A stretch of DNA of 64,000 nucleotides from Dimorphilus gyrociliatus. Its lineage: Eukaryota; Animalia; Annelida. Both the position numbers and the translations under genes were made by a program. Shown here piece after piece: positions 16,932 through 24,230 of the stretch (the first letter of the stretch is position 1; each line of letters begins with the position of its first letter). A model generated the notes under the pieces. That model saw only the letters and a list, made by a program, of their open reading frames with translations. It was not told the DNA's origin and searched no databases. The stretch spans positions 1-64,000 of the forward strand of contig CAJFCJ010000031.1 in NCBI GenBank assembly GCA_904063045.1. Reading direction: 5' to 3'.

Positions 16932-19084
16932 ATGTCGAGAGTTAATCCAGTAAAGAAAGTGCCCCTACATTTGCAGGTTTGTCTATCGCCAATTTTATTG
17001 GAAGCCTTCGCCGTATAGATTTTTTCACTTTTCGTTTATCCGATGTTTGACAGATGTTAGACATTTCGCACTATTAACAAGTCTAAGTATTTTTAATGCA
17101 ACGAATGTGGAAAAGCAAAAAAGACTATGTTTATTTGTTTTTTTTGTGCGATCTACTATTGTTTTTTTTTATCAACGCGGGAAAAAAAATGTTATGTCAA
17201 TGGAGTGACTCACAATTTTAATTATTCATTGTCTTTTGCAGAGCGCCCAATCTAGAATACTTATCAAGGGTGGAAAAATTGTAAATGATGACCGCTCATT
17301 CTTCTCTGATGTCTACATTGAAGATGGGGTCATTAAGTAAGCTACACAAGAGTCTGTAAGAGATATCTGAATTAAAATGAAATAATATTTTTTCAGACAA
17401 ATTGGCAACAATATCACAATACCAGGTGGTGCGCGTACAATCGAGGCCAAGGGTAAACTCATCATTCCTGGTGGTATTGATACCCATACTCATATGCAAC
17501 TTCCATTCATGGGCATGACCGCCGTTGACGATTTTTATCATGGAACAAGGGCCGCTTTAGCGGGCGGAACAACAATGATAATTGATTTTGTTCTAGATAA
17601 GAAGGGAACTCCTTTATTGGAGGCATACGAGAAATGGCGTTCGTGGGCTGATTCCAAAGTTTGTTGCGACTACGGTTTTCACGTTGGTGTTACTTGGTGG
17701 TCAGATAAAGTTAAAGCTGAAATGGAAACACTCGTAAAAGAAAAAGGAATAAACTCCTTTAAAATGTTTATGGCGTATAAAGACATGTTTATGCTACACG
17801 ATAATGAATTATACGAATCGTTTAAGAGATGCTCAGAGTTGGGAGCACTTGCGATGGTTCACGCCGAAAACGGCGAAATTATAGACGAAAAATCGAAGGA
17901 AATTGTAAGCACTGGGATTACCGGCCCTGAGGGACACGAACAATCAAGACCAGAACCTTTAGAAGCCGAAGCAACAAACAGAGCAGTCATGATTGCGGAC
18001 CAAGCCAACTGCCCGCTATATGTTGTTCACGTTATGTCGAAGAGTGCGGCTGACGTTGTAGCTGCGGCCAGGCGAAGTGGCAAAGTTGTTTTCGGTGAAC
18101 CTATAGCGGCTGGCCTTGCTACCGATGGAACTCATTATTTCAACAAATGTTGGCGTCACGCAGCCGGACATGTGATGTCCCCTCCTCTGCGTCCAGACAC
18201 TACCACACCAAAATACTTGATGCAGCTTTTAGCTAACAACGATCTTCAATTAACAGGTACCGACAATTGTACCTTTAATGCCGATCAAAAAGCGTTGGGT
18301 AAGGATGACTTCCGAAAAATACCCAATGGAGTAAACGGAGTTGAGGATCGTATGAGTGTTATATGGGAAAACGGAGTTCATTCCGGAGTTATGGATCCTT
18401 GTCGATTTGTTGCCGTCACTTCGACAAACGCGGCAAAAATTTTTAACATTTACCCGCAAAAAGGACGTATTGCTGTAGGATCCGATGCAGATATTGTTAT
18501 CTGGGATCCCACTGCTACTAGAACCATTTCAGCTAAAACCCATCATCAAAAATGCGACTTTAACATATTTGAGGGTATGACTTGTCATGGTGTACCAGAG
18601 ATCGTAATAAGTCAAGGTGCTATTGTGGTTGAGGATGGTCAGGTCCACGTTACCCAAGGTATTGGACGATACATTGAAATGCCTCCATTCCCTGAGGCGG
18701 CGTTCGCTAAGTTTGAGCACAAGCAAACTGGTCCCATAAAAATCGATAGAGAACCATACGACGGATCGGTAGCTCAGCTCCCTCAAAGCGAGGTTAACGA
18801 TACACCTCAGTCAATAAGATCAAGAATGATGGATGGAGCAAATCCAATCACAAACAATCCGGATTTTCATAATAGACCTCCGACTCGTTCTGGTGGTCGT
18901 TCCATGCACGATTCCAGCTTCAGTCTTAGTGGTATAATTTTTTAACATATATTAATATTTAATACCTTTCTAATTTTTAACTTTTTAATCCTTTTTAGGT
19001 GCACAATATGACGATAAAAAACCACCAAAGTCTGGTATGAAAGTAATTAATCCTCCCGGCGGTAAATCCAGCGGTATTTGGTAA
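16932..19084 (+). CDS. DPYS: Dihydropyrimidinase / CRMP (short isoform), 4 exons
   Basis: Exons 16932-16976 ([15 protein letters not shown]), 17242-17336, 17397-18931 and 18999-19084 are all frame-consistent. Metal ligands are present: [30 protein letters not shown]. The tail reads SFSLSGAQYDD..PPGGKS. Confidence 0.95.
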
Positions 19085-19659
19085 GAAGAGGAGAGAAGAA
19101 GAAAAGTTTTAATTCATTCATACTCGAAGATGATTCTTTTCCTAATCATTTAAGATAAAATTTTTGAACATTCCGTAATTGTTCCTTATAACGAAAGCTG
19201 TCTTTCGAATTAAAAATTTGCCTAAATGTTACACTTTTTCGTGTTCTGTAGCTAACACTCTTGAAAAGCTTAACATGACAAAAAGTCTTTTATACATTTA
19301 GTCAAAATCTATTTGGAAGAAAACTATAGTCAAGTCATCTGTTTTATTTTGTTCAGTTAGTGACAAGCAACTTGGCCTTATTGTGGTTTATGCAGCTAAT
19401 AGTATGATGTGAAAAAAAGAAGCATAAATACATAACTATGTAATAGCAGGCGCTTTATATCAGTGGCTTTTGATGTGATTGTCAAAAATAGACTAATACG
19501 AGTTAGAATAATAAACATATCTAAGTAAAAAACAAAAATTTGAAAAAAAAATCGTCTGTTTTGTTTTATTTGAGAAAAGATACAAAGGCATATTCAATTT
19601 CTTGTTTGAATTAAGTCTGAAGATGATAAATGTCAGAAAAACAGTATTCTTTTCTTCTA

Positions 19660-20865
19660 TTATGATAAATCGGAATTGAACTGATCTTCTGATTGATAAG
19701 TAATTGATACTTTTTCCAAGGATGGTCCTCTACAAATCAGACAAGTTTTTCTATTCTTTAACAATAGGCGGAATGTATCAATATGTTCCTCATCAAATAC
19801 TTTTGTACTAAATGCGTCAATAACATCTATATTCGGATTATTGGCCACAAGATGAACTAATCCTTCGGCAGTGAAATTCTCAATTCCTCTTATATTTAAG
19901 AAATTGATATATTTTAAATATTTAGAGATATTGTAAAGAGATCTATCAGTTAGACTTTTAGCATTTGCTAAATTTAGATTTCGAAGTAGTGGCAAACCCT
20001 GGAGGAAAAATTAGTATAATTACTTTTATGTGATTATATAATAATTTCGATAAGAAGAATTTACTAACCCTTAGTAATCTTTCTACAAAGTGATCATTTA
20101 GAAAGAAATCGCAGTTATCAAGGGAGAAGAACTTTATATTTGGAGATTTCGATAGAATTATTTTTATTGTTTTTTCCGTTATATAAACTCCGCTCAGATC
20201 TAAATGCTCCAAGGTTAAAGCTAAAAGACTAGATAGATCTTTATTGTTTAGGCGTCTTTTTAGTTTACGGCGTCGGATTAATTCGCTAAAATTTACAAAT
20301 TGAAAAGAAAATTAGGATTAGGTTAGGGTTATATGAAATCTAATCGCTTACTTAATTAGATATTCATCTGGAAAATTCTCAAAATCGTATTGTTGCACAT
20401 TTACAAGAAGATAGTCTAGGCATCTCTCCAAAAGTCGGATAACTTTTGTTCCCTCGTGAAATGGACTCTATTAAATAAACAAGTTAAAGTTCTATCATTA
20501 AGATAGAATAATAAACACACGAATGAACCTACTCTCTCAAAATATCGTCCGTAGGATGCTCTCACAAACATTTCATCATTTTCAATCTTTTCCTCAAATC
20601 TTCTATGTCCGCTGAACGATGTCGACTCTTTAATTGTGTGTTTTACATCTTCCCAACTGGTTAATTTCATAAGGGATAATGACATTATATCTTCTAAGCG
20701 TACATAGCCATCACCGTAAATTACTAAACCCTCTTTGACCGCTCCGTGCCTTAGGAGATAGGTTAATTTTCTACTCGTCTTATTTATTCTATCAATTAAT
20801 TCCCTATTTTCATTTGCAATATCTATATCCAATGAATCACTATTAAGAGTTTGAATTTCCTCCAT
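19660..20865 (-). CDS. Fusion protein, ~334 aa: Tpt1/KptA (tRNA 2'-phosphotransferase) N-lobe + BC-box-like helix + AMN1/FBXL-type LRRs
   Basis: Exons 20865-20533, 20467-20352, 20285-20069 and 19998-19660 join by GT-AG introns of 65, 66 and 70 nt, all in frame. The N-part SRKLTYLLRHGA..G..DGYV..EDI..RRFE..VRASYG is Tpt1-like. The C-part has VIRLLERCLDYL and LRRs (LEHLDLSGVYIT, LRNLNLANAKSLTDRSL). Confidence 0.8.
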
Positions 20866-21184
20866 TTTCTCTATTTATTATTATTGTTATTATTATTATT
20901 CAAAATTTAACTGAATTTTCAAGTATTTCAAGTCCTTTTTTTAACTGGATTGATCGTTGTTACGTCTAGAAATTTATTCTTATTATCAAAGATTACGAAA
21001 TCGTCGCTTTTAAATAGCAGAGAATATTGCACAATTAAAGCAATTAGAACGATTTTGTGTCTGTAGTGAAGATGGCGTTAGTTTATCATGGCAACATTCG
21101 AAGTCACGTGATATAATATATGAACGAACGTTTTCAATTCTATTGGAATTTAATAGTTTATGTGTAGATTTTGTCGATAAAAAC
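20866..21184. promoter_or_regulatory. ~320-bp bidirectional promoter (Tpt1-LRR / RNASEK)
   Basis: Head-to-head ATGs at 20865 and 21185. Contains YY1-like AAGATGGCG (21069-21077), X-box-like GTTTATCATGGCAAC (21081-21095) and E-box/CLEAR-like GTCACGTGAT (21103-21112). Confidence 0.65.
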
Positions 21185-21538
21185 ATGCTGTGTTGTGGCC
21201 CGAAACTATCTGCATGTGGTATGGTACTAGGCCTTTGGGGTGTTATTATGCTGGTAATCCTAAAATTATAAACATTTTTATATTTTCACTGAGTTCCTTT
21301 GAATCGTCAACAGACTTTCCTGGGCATATTTTTTCAAATCGAAAGTCCAGCCCTAGCCGAAGATTTACCAGTTGAGGAGGAAGAACTTCTAAAAGACGAC
21401 GTAGGAAAATACATGAGTGGACTTTATAAACAGGCTTCGGCTAATTGTTTTATAGCGGCCGTTGTATACGTTGGTGTACTATGCTTTTCTTTCGTTTCCT
21501 ACAAGCTAAGCGATAGAATGGCCTACTTAAAACCATAG
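21185..21538 (+). CDS. RNASEK: Ribonuclease kappa / V-ATPase subunit f, 97 aa, 2 exons
   Basis: Exon 21185-21253 (MLCCGPKLSACGMVLGLWGVIML), a 60-nt intron, then 21314-21538 (TFLGIFF..SPALAEDLP..Y.QASANCFIAAVVYV). Two TM helices. Confidence 0.9.
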
Positions 21539-24230
21539 GTTACAAAATTGTTAGAGTTAAATATCTAGAAATGTTTCAAATTTTTTTATCATTTTGTTCC
21601 TTGTTTCAAATGCTAGTCTCAAATTCCTCTAGTCAAACCAATAGATAAAAAATGTTTTATTTCTTAATGATAACCTTTTTATTTTTCTTTACAAGTTAAT
21701 TTTAAATTGAAGAAAATATATATATAAATTGTATTTAATGTAAATACATTTAAATATTATATATAATACGCATTTATATAATGTAATATAGAAAAGATGA
21801 ACGCAAACTCATTGCCTAAAGGGCTTTGGTATAATATATATTCTTTTAATTTCCTTGTCACGTATACGTAAACAGTAAAGGAAATTTAATTGGTTTCATT
21901 TTTCAGCCATTTTTTGTGTAAATCAGTACCGAAAACCTTCAAAATAACAATTATACAATGTCTTATAAGTATTTTTCAACTATGAAGAAGACAAGAGAGT
22001 TTTTAAAATGTTGAAAAAATTAGAAAAATAAGAAGAAACAATTAAAGTCAAAAATAAAAAGAAAAAAATGTTATTTTTAGAAAAAAAGTGCCTTTAAGTT
22101 TAAGCAGCAAATATTAGAAAGTCAAATAAAATATCACCATTTCAATCCATTTGGTATGTTGGCAACAAGTGGAAAAATAGGATTAATAGCACTTGATGTT
22201 TGTTCTATTTTACAGATTAAGTGTGCTTTTTATAAAATGCATCTAAATGACCTTTTTCATAGACAGAGAGAGAAAGAGAAAAAAAGAGATTGAAAATCTG
22301 AAAAACTATGTAGAGTATTGTTCATCATCATTGTCATTGTAACTTTCATTTCGATCGTTTCTATGTCAATTTGTCTCTAGGGTATATTATGATGAATCAA
22401 CATAAATGAATGCAAAAATTCAACATTAACAAATCGAAACATTTCCACAATATAGTTCGAATCAATTAACTCTATATATTCATGTGGATTTTTCTGATAT
22501 TTTTTATGTGGTTATCTTTCTAATCCTCTTAATAATCCTTTACAGATTTAAAATACCAACATCGGCTTTATAGAAGCTCTTAATCAGTTTAAATAATAGT
22601 AATAACAATAATAATAATAAATAGTAATAATAATATTAATAACTCTGAAGCTTATGACTTTTAATATGGTAAAACTAATCACATAAGAATCTTAGATTTT
22701 TAACAAGGATTTGATATTTATCCCTTAGGGGTAATTCAGTTTCTAAATAAAGAAACTTTCCACTTCCTTCTACGAATTCTTTAATTCTATTTCTTGATTT
22801 TGAAGTTATACCTTAGAAAAAAACGCTTCAAAATACTCTTAATTGTCTTGTTAATGGAAAAAGAGAAGAAAGTAATCAAGGGAAAATCTCTGCCTTATAC
22901 ATTTCTATGTTAATCCCATATATATATATATAGTATATATATATATTCTTATAAATAATTACATTTATTATTAATAACACTTTATTCAAATATAAAAAGA
23001 AATTGCTATGATAAGTATCATTTTTTAAAGCTGGAGGTGGATAAAGAAACTTGGGGATAAGAGAGAAAGAGAGAGAGAGAGAAAGTGTGAGTGTGTGTGT
23101 GTATAAGAGAAAGAGTTTGTACTTATGCCTACATACGAATGTGTTTGTGTGATGTAAAAATATACGGTATAAAGTATATCTATACTCTATACAATACAAT
23201 ATAATAATTAGAGAGATTCTACGTTCAAGAGAGTTAATTATCTCTATTATATCTTATAAAAGGATTAGTTCAAGTGTTAATATTTATTGGTTTTTTATAA
23301 AATAAAAAAAAAAGAAACTATTCGTATGAACACAAATATAGAAATGACAAAAATTCAATGGGTTCTCAACGTAAAGTTTGTTTAGACTGCATAAATATAA
23401 ACTGAATGTTATATATATATATATATATTTGCTAAACTATTTCATTGAAAATAAATATTTCTACTAGAATCGTAGAATTTTTGTTTTCTTTTCTGTTTTT
23501 ATCTTCTTCTTCATCATCATCATCATCTTCTTCTTCTTCTACATTTACAAATCTTATCACAAGTACTGCTTCAATCGTATAATAATTATTAGTGTTATTA
23601 GTGTTTATTCTGTAAATATGGCTAAACAGACGTGTAATATTAAGCTACAGTCTCTGCTAAGGTAGTAGAACTGGATAAAAGATTAAGATATTAGCTTACT
23701 CAGCACACACCAGGGAGTCTTTAAAAAATTATGCTTTAAGAATAGATAAACAAGAATCAAATATGCTCTAAGTACATCAGAATAAAGATTGTTATACTAT
23801 TCTAGATAGGCCTATATATAAAGGGTGTATTTTTAAAAAGTCTCTTAATCAATCTCGAATTTCAAACATAGGATACAAATAAAACATTTAATAGGTTAAA
23901 TAAGAATAGAGTATGCTATCTTTTTCTCTCTTTTAACAAATAATTTACTCAATTAAATTAAAATAATTATTAAAAAAAAACGACAAAAGCAAATATGGAT
24001 TTTACAATAATAAAATAATATACAGTGTATTTTCAAGGTCATCGAAAGCTTAATTGGACGAGTAAAGGAGTAAGGGGTAGATTGATAAATGGGGGTAAGT
24101 GAGTGATTTTTAACAAGAATTGTTTACTTAACGGCGCTTATACACTTCAATTTAAAAACTAGAATAAATTTTCTAATCCCTCCCTCTCCTATCACATTCT
24201 TTCATCTTCATTATCTTCTTTATCACTCTT

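What the first reader, a model, noticed from the sequence alone, without database searches (positions are those of the whole stretch)
19660..20865. Tpt1/KptA RNA-binding lobe fused to a BC-box-like/LRR E3-adaptor module, with no NAD+ lobe
Seen: exon 1 encodes a Tpt1-like N-lobe with all four tetrad-equivalent residues (LLRHG: R,H; RRF: R; VRAS: R), but YGR replaces the usual QGH. The gene then splices in frame into VIRLLERCLDYL and LRRs. The NAD+-binding C-lobe is absent. Established: Tpt1 uses the Arg-His-Arg-Arg N-lobe to bind RNA 2'-phosphate and a separate ADP-ribosyltransferase-like lobe to bind NAD+. AMN1/ZYG11/FBXL-type LRR proteins carry an N-terminal LxxxC or F-box helix and act as cullin-ligase substrate receptors. 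Inference: a non-catalytic reader of 2'-phosphorylated, damaged or ADP-ribosylated RNA ends coupled to ubiquitination, i.e. a candidate RNA-sensing E3 adaptor. I know of no description of this architecture.
Basis: partly seen in the sequence, partly recalled or inferred. Interest (0 to 1): 0.85.

Follow-up and report, generated by a model that had tools for sequence, protein, structure and literature searches.

The report
Tpt1 RNA lobe fused to LRRs
This expressed worm gene belongs to an old, unstudied animal protein family that keeps only the RNA-binding half of the RNA-repair enzyme Tpt1 and joins it to a leucine-rich-repeat protein-binding module, so it probably binds a phosphate-marked RNA or nucleotide and hands it to a partner protein instead of acting as an enzyme.

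Summary
The gene is DgyrCDS14171 of the annelid Dimorphilus gyrociliatus: four exons on the minus strand (20865-19660), 334 aa. Exon 1 is a Tpt1/KptA RNA lobe (Pfam PF01885, 50.5 bits, profile positions 2-81 of 177; 1.3 Å rmsd to mouse TRPT1). The rest is a helical cap plus five 26-residue LRRs, closest to AMN1 and FBXL/Skp2 LRRs. There is no NAD+ lobe.

It is not a one-off. The same architecture, with the same intron at the domain boundary, occurs in cnidarians, molluscs, rotifers, echinoderms, a hemichordate and amphioxus, with a fragment in a nematode. Databases name these proteins only automatically, and I found no paper on the family.

- The fourth tetrad arginine lies in the missing C-lobe, so at most three of four residues are present.
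- The catalytic His is Tyr in 26 of 28 family members.
- No member has a Pfam F-box. The BC-box-like pattern is conserved but too short to prove anything.

Best reading: a non-catalytic adaptor that binds a phosphorylated RNA or nucleotide. The E3-receptor role is plausible but untested. One metagenomic relative adds a NADAR ADP-ribosyl-hydrolase domain. The scan separately noted a Tpt1 with extra N-lobes elsewhere in this genome; I did not check that note.

The parts
19660..20865 (-). Coding span of DgyrCDS14171 (334 aa, 4 exons, stop codon included)
   Evidence: The model translates without stops. It is identical to deposited protein P0001. All three introns are removed in the run X1 contig.
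20533..20865 (-). Exon 1, aa 1-111: N-terminal helix plus the Tpt1/KptA RNA lobe
   Evidence: Pfam PF01885, 50.5 bits, profile 2-81/177. Model residues 23-109 superpose on mouse TRPT1 7yw2 residues 19-103 at 1.3 Å, Z 13.3, 32% identity.
20542..20790 (-). Tpt1 RNA-lobe core, aa 26-108. Holds S31-R32, R39-H40 (20746-20751), R88-R89 (20599-20604), V101-R102-A103 and Y105-G106-R107 (in place of QGH).
   Evidence: Column counts in 28 family members: R39 28/28; position 40 is Y 26 and H 2; R89 26/28; R102 26/28. Alignment with catalytic Tpt1 proteins.
20468..20532 (-). Intron 1 (65 nt, GT..AG, phase 0), exactly at the boundary between the RNA lobe and the linker
   Evidence: Joint 20467/20533 in the transcript contig. 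The same intron position is found in Liolophura, Branchiostoma and Rhopilema orthologs.
20352..20467 (-). Exon 2, aa 112-150: conserved linker (SPFHEGTKV; H115 in 27/28), the BC-box-like helix RLLERCLDYL (aa 122-131, nt 20408-20437) and the FPDEYLI motif
   Evidence: Conservation counts. Helix 123-133 in the AF2 model. AMN1 homologs align from residue 118/123.
20286..20351 (-). Intron 2 (66 nt, phase 2)
   Evidence: Joint 20285/20352. The Liolophura ortholog has an intron at the same place, after DEYLI plus 2 nt.
20069..20285 (-). Exon 3, aa 150-222: cap helices and the first two LRRs
   Evidence: phmmer match to FBXL2 LRRs covering aa 173-273. Strands 177-179 and 202-204 in the AF2 model.
19999..20068 (-). 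Intron 3 (70 nt)
   Evidence: Joint 19997/20068 with 'cut +1'.
19660..19998 (-). Exon 4, aa 223-334 plus stop: LRR 3-5, a C-terminal cap and a disordered tail
   Evidence: AF2 strands 229-231, 255-257 and 281-289; pLDDT above 90 up to about aa 310. Skp2, Rad7 and FBXL17 LRR matches at Z 16.
19539..19659 (-). 3' UTR, up to the end of the transcript contig
   Evidence: Contig record 2 starts at 19539.

Best explanation
DgyrCDS14171 is the Dimorphilus member of an ancient, single-origin animal family. In this family the RNA lobe of Tpt1/TRPT1 (a winged-helix-like domain that cradles a flipped-out nucleotide and clamps its 2'-phosphate) was separated from the NAD+ lobe. It was joined, through a conserved linker, to an AMN1/FBXL-type leucine-rich-repeat solenoid.

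Shown here:
- the architecture
- that the gene is expressed
- its conservation from cnidarians to cephalochordates
- the absence of every NAD+-binding element

Inferred:
- The protein cannot transfer phosphate or ADP-ribose.
- It works as a non-catalytic adaptor. Its RNA lobe still carries the two phosphate-clamping arginines (R39, R89) and the Ser-Lys/Arg pair that sandwiches the base. That lobe binds a phosphorylated nucleotide ligand, such as RNA with an internal or terminal 2'-PO4, a 5'-PO4 end, or an ADP-ribose-phosphate-type adduct.
- The LRR module binds a protein partner.
- The partner may be a cullin-RING ligase core reached through the conserved T/R-L-x-E-x-C/S-x-x-x-I/V helix. This is one possibility, not a finding.
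For: Gene and transcript.

Tpt1 RNA lobe:
- Pfam hit at 50.5 bits.
- All 28 aligned members hit PF01885.
- 1.3 Å rmsd over 83 residues to mouse TRPT1.

Retained ligand-contact positions:
- R39 28/28, R89 26/28, S31 as S/G 23/28, position 32 as K/R 27/28.
- These map by motif and offset to Pho Tpt1 Ser6, Lys7, Arg14 and Arg62, which hold the 2'-PO4 nucleotide (PMC10622864; offsets).

Loss of catalysis:
- No C-lobe motif in any of the 42 LRR-module proteins.
- His to Tyr in 26/28 members, and QGH replaced by [YF]-x-R.
- The fourth tetrad Arg lies in the C-lobe (PMC8464070).

LRR module:
- Sequence matches to FBXL2, FBXL17, KDM2 and SKP2.
- AMN1 homologs are the top structural matches.
- Skp2, Rad7 and FBXL17 at Z about 16.

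Old and under constraint:
- Orthologs in Cnidaria, Mollusca, Rotifera, Echinodermata, Hemichordata and Cephalochordata, with a fragment in Nematoda.
- The boundary intron is conserved.
- 45 of 47 family N-lobes fall in one clade, SH-aLRT 83.

Context clues:
- A relative on a metagenome contig carries N-lobe + LRR + NADAR (PF08719, E 1e-29) in one uninterrupted ORF. NADAR enzymes remove ADP-ribose from nucleic-acid bases (PMC11833690).
- Yeast Amn1 binds Skp1 and Cdc53 and drives Ace2 turnover (PMC6181423).
Against: - No binding was tested, either to RNA or nucleotides or to proteins.
- In Runella Tpt1, NADP+, a 2'-phosphate mimic that contacts only the N-lobe, binds weakly (KD about 1 mM; PMC8464070).
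- In the enzyme, part of the phosphate cage comes from the missing C-lobe (Arg133 and Arg115 in Pho Tpt1).
- The Lys60-equivalent position is not conserved in the family.
- The His-to-Tyr and QGH changes could mean the pocket has been repurposed.
- No F-box was detected, and the BC-box pattern is too short to be significant.
- The function of animal AMN1 is unknown.
- The NADAR fusion is a single lineage.
Confidence: 0.5

Rival explanations
1. Substrate receptor of a cullin-RING ubiquitin ligase that is directed to RNA. The BC-box-like helix would bind Elongin C (CRL2/5), or the cap helices would bind Skp1. The Tpt1 lobe would bring in a protein-RNA complex that carries a 2'-phosphate or ADP-ribosyl mark.
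For: - A conserved pattern [T/R]-L-x-E-x-[C/S/A]-x-x-x-[I/V] is followed by F-P-D-E-aromatic: L123 28/28, C/S/A 26/28, I/V 27/28, F143 26/28, P144 23/28, D145 28/28.
- The nearest folds are E3 receptors: Skp2, FBXL17, FBXL2 and Rad7-Elc1.
- AMN1 homologs are the best AFDB match.
- Yeast Amn1 binds Skp1/Cdc53 (PMC6181423).
Against: - 0 of 28 members hit a Pfam F-box.
- hhalign against an F-box/LRR protein aligns the LRRs only.
- The linker profile finds no BC-box or F-box chain in the PDB.
- Structural aligners place residues 112-170 on LRR units of the targets, not on their F-boxes.
- The ninth position of a Cul2 box is not hydrophobic here.
- The reported F-box of yeast Amn1 is atypical and internal.
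Confidence: 0.25
2. An AMN1-like LRR protein in which the former Tpt1 lobe no longer binds nucleic acid. The lobe would serve as a protein-interaction or structural domain, a relic winged helix.
For: - The catalytic His is replaced by Tyr in 26/28 members.
- The QGH hinge is replaced.
- There is a 5-6 residue insertion before KRF.
- The Lys60-equivalent position is variable.
- The isolated N-lobe has weak affinity for a 2'-phosphate mimic.
Against: The residues that stayed invariant or nearly so (R39, R89, K/R32, S/G31, G41, R102) are the ones that line the nucleotide and phosphate pocket in Tpt1 structures. A relic domain would not be expected to keep those in particular from cnidarians to chordates.
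Confidence: 0.2
3. One half of a split enzyme. The RNA lobe would cooperate in trans with a separate NAD+-binding ADP-ribosyltransferase-fold protein docked on the LRRs, restoring 2'-phosphotransfer or RNA ADP-ribosylation.
For: The two Tpt1 lobes are structurally independent and flexibly linked (PMC8464070). LRRs are docking modules.
Against: No free-standing C-lobe partner was seen. The hinge QGH and the catalytic His are not kept in the family, which argues against preserved chemistry.
Confidence: 0.04
4. A gene-model artefact: exon 1 and the LRR exons belong to different genes.
For: None beyond the a priori possibility. The transcript contig also runs into the neighbouring opposite-strand gene, which shows that the assembler can merge overlapping transcripts.
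Against: - The three minus-strand splice joints directly link exon 1 to the LRR exons, in frame.
- Intron-free transcript-derived orthologs (Logan contigs of about 1.1-1.6 kb) encode the same fusion.
- The relative on a metagenome contig has it in one continuous ORF.
Confidence: 0.01

Closest known systems
Tpt1 / KptA / TRPT1 RNA 2'-phosphotransferase (Pfam PF01885)
   Same: The N-terminal RNA lobe matches in sequence (50.5 bits, about 32% identity to mouse and human TRPT1) and in fold (1.3 Å rmsd). The SKxL...LR[H]GA and KRF motifs are present, including the two phosphate-clamping arginines.
   Different: The whole NAD+ (ADP-ribosyltransferase-fold) lobe is absent, and with it the fourth tetrad Arg and the HGT motif. 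The QGH hinge is Y-G-R here and [YF]-x-R in the family. The tetrad His is Tyr in 26/28 family members. An LRR domain follows instead.
AMN1 homologs (animal 'protein AMN1 homolog', about 258 aa; yeast Amn1)
   Same: They are the best structural match for residues 118-313 (Foldseek E 4.8e-9 to 3e-7, TM by hit 0.53-0.61). They start with the same helix-then-'ΦP..' cap before CC-type LRRs. NCBI names the oyster ortholog 'protein AMN1 homolog isoform X3'.
   Different: Sequence identity is only about 18%, and AMN1 has no Tpt1 lobe. Orthology is not shown. The function of animal AMN1 is unknown. Yeast Amn1 has an atypical internal F-box that I could not find here.
FBXL-type F-box/LRR proteins (FBXL2, FBXL17, SKP2, KDM2A/B)
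   Same: The 26-residue cysteine-containing LRRs are detectable by sequence (FBXL2 E 3.7e-12) and by structure (Z 14-16.6).
   Different: No F-box was found by Pfam in any of 28 members, nor by profile comparison.
VHL-box / BC-box substrate receptors (VHL, ZYG11/ZER1, Rad7)
   Same: A conserved L-x-x-x-[C/S/A]-x-x-x-[I/V] helix lies just before an LRR domain. The Rad7-Elc1 structure is among the top structural matches (Z 16.1).
   Different: Only a short pattern is shared. The Cul2-box consensus is not fully met. There is no significant profile match and no binding data. The comparison with the VHL and ZYG11 sequences is from my memory, not from a tool.
S. pombe Tpt1-Yae1 fusion (PMC12810181)
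   Same: It shows that Tpt1 modules take part in domain fusions in eukaryotes.
   Different: That fusion keeps a complete, active Tpt1 catalytic domain. This family keeps only the RNA lobe.

Membership tests
Tpt1/KptA RNA 2'-phosphotransferase | N-terminal RNA lobe (first half of PF01885) with the Tpt1 fold | tested here: met
   Pfam 50.5 bits, profile 2-81/177. 1.3 Å over 83 residues to 7yw2, Z 13.3.
Tpt1/KptA RNA 2'-phosphotransferase | C-terminal NAD+ lobe (ADP-ribosyltransferase fold, HGT motif) | tested here: not met
   The Pfam match stops at profile position 81-82. Residues 112-334 are helices and LRRs. 0 of 42 LRR-module proteins have the C-lobe motif.
Tpt1/KptA RNA 2'-phosphotransferase | [quoted passage not shown] | tested here: not met
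   R39, H40 and R89 are present in Dimorphilus. The fourth Arg belongs to the absent C-lobe (PMC8464070). The His is Tyr in 26/28 family members.
Tpt1/KptA RNA 2'-phosphotransferase | Conserved QGH(S/T) inter-lobe hinge | tested here: not met
   Y105-G106-R107 aligns with QGH. All 47 catalytic N-lobes examined have [QH]GH; 39 of the 40 LRR-module N-lobes examined lack it.
AMN1-like LRR proteins | Fold of the helical cap plus CC-type LRR solenoid equivalent to AMN1 from its N-terminus | tested here: met
   AFDB-SwissProt: AMN1 of rat, zebrafish, mouse and human at E 4.8e-9 to 3.3e-7. Query 118/123-306/313 aligns with AMN1 5/10-191/257. AMN1 clusters are next-nearest in the ESM Atlas.
AMN1-like LRR proteins | Sequence-level orthology to AMN1 | tested here: inconclusive
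   About 18% identity in the structural alignments. No AMN1 sequence was retrieved for a tree.
F-box proteins (SCF receptors) | F-box motif (PF00646 / PF12937) | tested here: not met
   0 of 28 members at E up to 1. hhalign against the F-box/LRR protein P0179 aligns LRRs only.
F-box proteins (SCF receptors) | Binding to Skp1 | not testable with these tools
   No complex prediction or experiment was available.
BC-box / VHL-box receptors (CRL2/CRL5) | BC-box consensus [S/T/P]-L-x-x-x-[C/S/A]-x-x-x-hydrophobic | tested here: inconclusive
   The pattern is present at aa 122-131 in 27/28 members if the first position is left free. The strict consensus, with T at the first position, is found at this site in 11/28. 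It is too short for significance, and the linker profile finds no BC-box chain in the PDB.
BC-box / VHL-box receptors (CRL2/CRL5) | Cul2 box (hydrophobic-P-x-x-hydrophobic-x-x-x-hydrophobic) or Cul5 box downstream | tested here: inconclusive
   F143-P144-D145-E146-[Y/H/F]147 is conserved, but position 151 is polar or variable.
BC-box / VHL-box receptors (CRL2/CRL5) | Binding to Elongin C | not testable with these tools
   No complex prediction or experiment was available.

The most novel reading that the evidence does not exclude
This animal-wide family is a non-catalytic reader of RNA phosphate marks, such as an internal or terminal 2'-phosphate or an ADP-ribosyl-phosphate adduct. It would deliver the marked RNA or its bound proteins to a cullin-RING ubiquitin ligase or another effector. 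That would be an RNA-mark-directed quality-control adaptor made from half of a tRNA-splicing enzyme, found in many invertebrate phyla and amphioxus. I saw no vertebrate or insect member.
Probability: 0.15. Interest if true: 0.85.

Novelty: new variant of a known kind. Interest (0 to 1): 0.55.

Why it matters
Tpt1 has so far been studied as a two-lobe enzyme. The role of animal TRPT1, and of RNA 2'-phosphate and phosphate-end ADP-ribosylation in animals, is still open.

Here is a family that kept only the RNA 2'-phosphate-binding lobe for more than half a billion years, always attached to an AMN1/FBXL-like LRR module. This suggests that animals do something with such marks other than erase them. 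The family gives a concrete, testable handle: a small, soluble-looking domain with two invariant arginines.

It would also give animal AMN1-like LRR proteins a first functional context. If the RNA lobe turns out not to bind nucleic acid, the family is still a clean example of an enzyme half being reused as a module.

Tried and rejected
- F-box hypothesis. The Pfam scan of 28 members found no F-box. The profile comparison with the F-box/LRR protein P0179 aligned only LRRs.
- BC-box or F-box by profile. A 65-position profile of the linker against PDB sequences gave only chance-level hits: AMSH-like protease and eS25, E above 0.3.
- AU test for monophyly of the family N-lobes. It did not finish in two 300-s runs. 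I report only the quick ML tree, with SH-aLRT 83 for 45/47 rows.
- Literature. Searches for Tpt1/KptA + leucine-rich repeat, PF01885 + LRR, and TRPT1 + AMN1 found nothing on this family. The one PF01885 + LRR paper is on a different ADP-ribosyltransferase-like family and lists TRPT1 only in a table.
- Spread of the N-lobe-LRR-NADAR architecture. Only its own cluster was found, so it is an isolated clue.
- A full-length TRPT1 in this genome. The multi-lobe Tpt1 representatives I looked up were from other species.
- The opposite-strand neighbour at 21185-21538 gave no Pfam hit. Its resemblance to ribonuclease kappa is from my memory only.
- Gene-model artefact. Rejected on the transcript joints.
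Full report
**The gene**

Reading the minus strand of 19000-21600 gives a four-exon model: 20865-20533, 20467-20352, 20285-20069 and 19998-19660. All introns are GT..AG, of 65, 66 and 70 nt. The model translates to 334 residues without a stop. An exhaustive HMMER search with exon 1 returned a 334-aa public protein (P0001) identical to my model. Its source name is DgyrCDS14171 of Dimorphilus gyrociliatus, a miniature annelid with a compact genome.

**Expression**

One public run (X1; library type not recorded) holds an assembled contig of 1,832 nt that lies on 19539-21253. It skips exactly the three introns, with CT..AC ends on the plus strand, meaning GT..AG on the minus strand. Exon 1 and the LRR exons are joined in frame.

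The same contig runs on across another joint, 21253 to 21314, into a small plus-strand gene. The two head-to-head transcripts therefore overlap or were merged by the assembler. This does not affect the three minus-strand joints.

**What the protein is made of**

*Exon 1.* Exon 1 alone matches Pfam PTS_2-RNA (PF01885) at E 3.2e-13, 50.5 bits (cut-off 26). The match covers only profile positions 2-81 of 177.

*Structure model.* An AlphaFold2 model built on a 28-sequence family alignment has mean pLDDT 85 and pTM 0.65.
- Residues 23-109 superpose on mouse TRPT1 (7yw2, residues 19-103) at 1.3 Å over 83 residues, Z 13.3, 32% identity. Human TRPT1 gives the same result.
- Residues 123-170 form three cap helices.
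- Residues 177-301 form five strand-helix repeats of about 26 residues.

*LRR part.* By sequence it matches FBXL2 (E 3.7e-12), FBXL17, KDM2A/B and SKP2. By structure the best PDB matches are Skp2, Rad7 (in its complex with Elc1) and FBXL17, at Z about 16. The best reviewed-UniProt models are AMN1 homologs (E 4.8e-9 to 3e-7, TM by hit 0.53-0.61), aligned from AMN1 residue 5-10 to query residue 118-123.

**What is missing or changed**

There is no NAD+ lobe. I collected 189 related proteins; 42 carry this LRR module and 46 carry a C-lobe motif (HGT...RxHIH). None carries both.

- In Runella Tpt1 the tetrad is Arg16, His17, Arg64 and Arg119, and 'Arg119 is housed in the C-lobe' (PMC8464070).
- In the archaeal structures the distal arginine bridges the NAD+ α-phosphate and the junction 3'-phosphate (PMC10622864).
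- Dimorphilus therefore has three of four: R39, H40 and R89. The Arg of VRAS is the arginine of the IRA motif before the hinge.
- The alignment with catalytic Tpt1 proteins shows S-Y-G-R in the place of N-Q-G-H.

**A family, not a one-off**

The same architecture (about 300-385 aa) is found in:
- Cnidaria: Rhopilema, Hydractinia
- Mollusca: Liolophura, Crassostrea/Magallana, Ylistrum, Elysia, Physella, Biomphalaria, Bulinus, Candidula, and partial records from Lottia, Sinanodonta and Plakobranchus (Solemya velum P0178, 273 aa, shows LRR Pfam hits only)
- Rotifera: Rotaria
- Nematoda: a fragment from Soboliphyme
- Echinodermata: Patiria, Acanthaster
- Hemichordata: Saccoglossus
- Cephalochordata: Branchiostoma

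It is also found in many intron-free transcript assemblies. AlphaFold DB has a cluster representative with the same two-domain layout (R7V4H2, E 6.5e-28). It also has a 417-aa protein that aligns over the whole length at 19% identity. The ESM Atlas has a 52-member cluster, mostly molluscs. I saw no vertebrate or insect member, but the searches do not prove absence.

Source names are automatic: '2'-phosphotransferase', 'uncharacterized protein', 'F-box protein SKP2B-like', 'F-box/LRR-repeat protein 7-like', 'protein AMN1 homolog isoform X3'. I found no paper on the family.

**Signatures and origin**

In 28 aligned members:

| Position | Count |
|---|---|
| R39 | 28/28 |
| 40 | Tyr 26, His 2 (Dimorphilus is one of the two) |
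| R89 | 26/28 |
| R102 | 26/28 |
| 105 / 107 (in place of QGH) | [Y/F] / R |
| F109-E110 | family-specific motif |
| P113-x-H115 | family-specific motif; H115 in 27/28 |

'LRYG' occurs in 36 of the 40 LRR-module N-lobes, in seven short fragments that look like family fragments, and in none of 47 catalytic Tpt1 lobes.

In a quick ML tree of 163 N-lobes, 45 of 47 family rows form one clade (SH-aLRT 83). The only other row inside that clade is itself a family fragment. The two rows outside are P0054 and P0102, which keep LRHG and YGHS. An AU test did not finish.

The phase-0 intron directly after ...FE[R/L/P], at the lobe boundary, is at the same place in Dimorphilus, Liolophura, Branchiostoma and the jellyfish Rhopilema. 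The intron after DEYLI + 2 nt is shared with Liolophura. The fusion therefore predates the split between cnidarians and bilaterians.

**How it probably works**

In the Pyrococcus and Aeropyrum structures the junction nucleoside is flipped into a crevice of the RNA lobe.
- Its base is stacked between Arg62 and Lys7.
- Its 2'-phosphate is held by Arg14, Lys60, Arg62, Tyr74 and the C-lobe residue Arg133.
- His15 and the C-lobe tetrad arginine (Arg116 in Aeropyrum, Arg115 in Pyrococcus) sit at the junction 3'-phosphate (PMC10622864).

By motif and by alignment offset, the Pyrococcus residues map as follows:

| Pho Tpt1 | Here |
|---|---|
| Ser6 | S31 |
| Lys7 | R32 |
| Arg14 | R39 |
| His15 | H40 |
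| Arg62 | R89 |

These are the positions the family keeps. The positions tied to chemistry, or supplied by the C-lobe, are changed or gone.

My best reading (confidence 0.5) is a non-catalytic module that binds a phosphorylated RNA or nucleotide and is joined to a protein-binding LRR. Points against it:
- Nothing was measured.
- In Runella Tpt1, NADP+, a 2'-phosphate mimic that contacts only the N-lobe, binds weakly (KD about 1 mM).
- The Lys60-equivalent position is not conserved.

One relative, P0102, adds a NADAR domain (PF08719, E 1.3e-29) after the LRRs. It lies in a single 448-codon ORF on a metagenome contig, with a CHORD-domain gene two genes downstream on the opposite strand. NADAR enzymes remove ADP-ribose from guanosine in DNA and RNA (PMC11833690). 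This points to nucleic-acid ADP-ribose or phosphate biology, but it is a single lineage.

**The E3-adaptor idea**

The helix [T/R]122-L123-x-E125-x-[C/S/A]127-x-x-x-[I/V]131 fits the BC-box pattern and is strongly conserved. It is followed by F143-P144-D145-E146-aromatic.

Against this:
- No member has a Pfam F-box.
- A profile comparison with an F-box/LRR protein aligns the LRRs only.
- A profile of the linker finds no BC-box or F-box protein in the PDB.
- Structural aligners treat residues 112-170 as extra LRR-like units.
- The ninth Cul2-box position is polar.

Yeast Amn1 does bind Skp1 and Cdc53 (PMC6181423), but through an atypical internal F-box. I put the ubiquitin-ligase receptor reading at about 0.25. 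It needs complex modelling or interaction data.

**Verdict**

The finding is a real, expressed and ancient domain architecture. It is absent from the literature I could search but present in databases under automatic names. It is not a Tpt1 enzyme and not a demonstrated F-box or BC-box protein. I rate it a new variant of known kinds, with moderate to good interest (0.55).

Noticed in passing
window 21185-21538 (+), intron 21254-21313: A small two-exon gene lies head-to-head with the finding. Its product is about 97 aa, begins MLCCGPKLSACG... and has two hydrophobic stretches. From memory it resembles ribonuclease kappa, but Pfam gave no hit. Its transcript overlaps, or was assembled together with, the 5' end of DgyrCDS14171.
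   Followed up: partly
window 17494-18945 (+): A single 483-codon exon of a dihydropyrimidinase/CRMP-type amidohydrolase (PF01979, E 3e-21). Its transcript contig (depth 882) ends at 19551 and overlaps the 3' end of the finding's transcript (19539) by about 13 nt, so the two genes converge.
   Followed up: partly
L001:3985-5331 (+), metagenome contig Ga0209960_1006899: P0102 is a 448-aa single ORF with a Tpt1 RNA lobe (keeps LRHG and YGHS), LRRs and a C-terminal NADAR domain (PF08719, E 1.3e-29). A CHORD-domain gene lies two genes downstream on the opposite strand. The organism is unknown, and no second lineage with this architecture was found.
   Followed up: partly
proteins P0057, P0037, P0030, P0023, P0020, P0019 (one search hits): Several proteins carry tandem Tpt1 RNA lobes. 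In some, extra N-lobes precede a complete Tpt1 (Tegillarca, Owenia, the ostracod Notodromas). Others hold arrays of several lobes (metagenomic proteins of about 850 aa; a dinoflagellate protein of about 1,050 aa). The RNA lobe seems to behave as a mobile module.
   Followed up: partly
L004:2487-4460 (Branchiostoma floridae locus of P0006): The lancelet ortholog's locus holds several tandem copies of the exon that encodes ...RRRQLTNAVLRSLLS...LDLHDMYFT. One gene model (P0007, 487 aa) strings them together.
   Followed up: no
C-termini of P0022, P0151, P0152, P0153 (alignment A1): Four orthologs end in a conserved tail P-C-x-[LM]-L-P-N-F-G-[KL]-[VT]-W, which the Dimorphilus protein lacks. P0022 (Liolophura) and P0152 (oyster cluster) are molluscan. 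The source organisms of P0151 and P0153, both transcript assemblies, are not recorded.
   Followed up: no
window 20311-20330 (intron 2, minus strand): A short telomere-repeat-like run (aaccctaacctaatcctaat) lies inside the 66-nt intron.
   Followed up: no
fragments P0002, P0005, P0024, P0029, P0035: Several short database 'proteins' end in ...FER/MER followed by V and a few odd residues. That is what reading through the conserved GT of the boundary intron would give, and the window's own ORF 20416-20865 does the same. They look like truncated gene calls of family members.
   Followed up: partly
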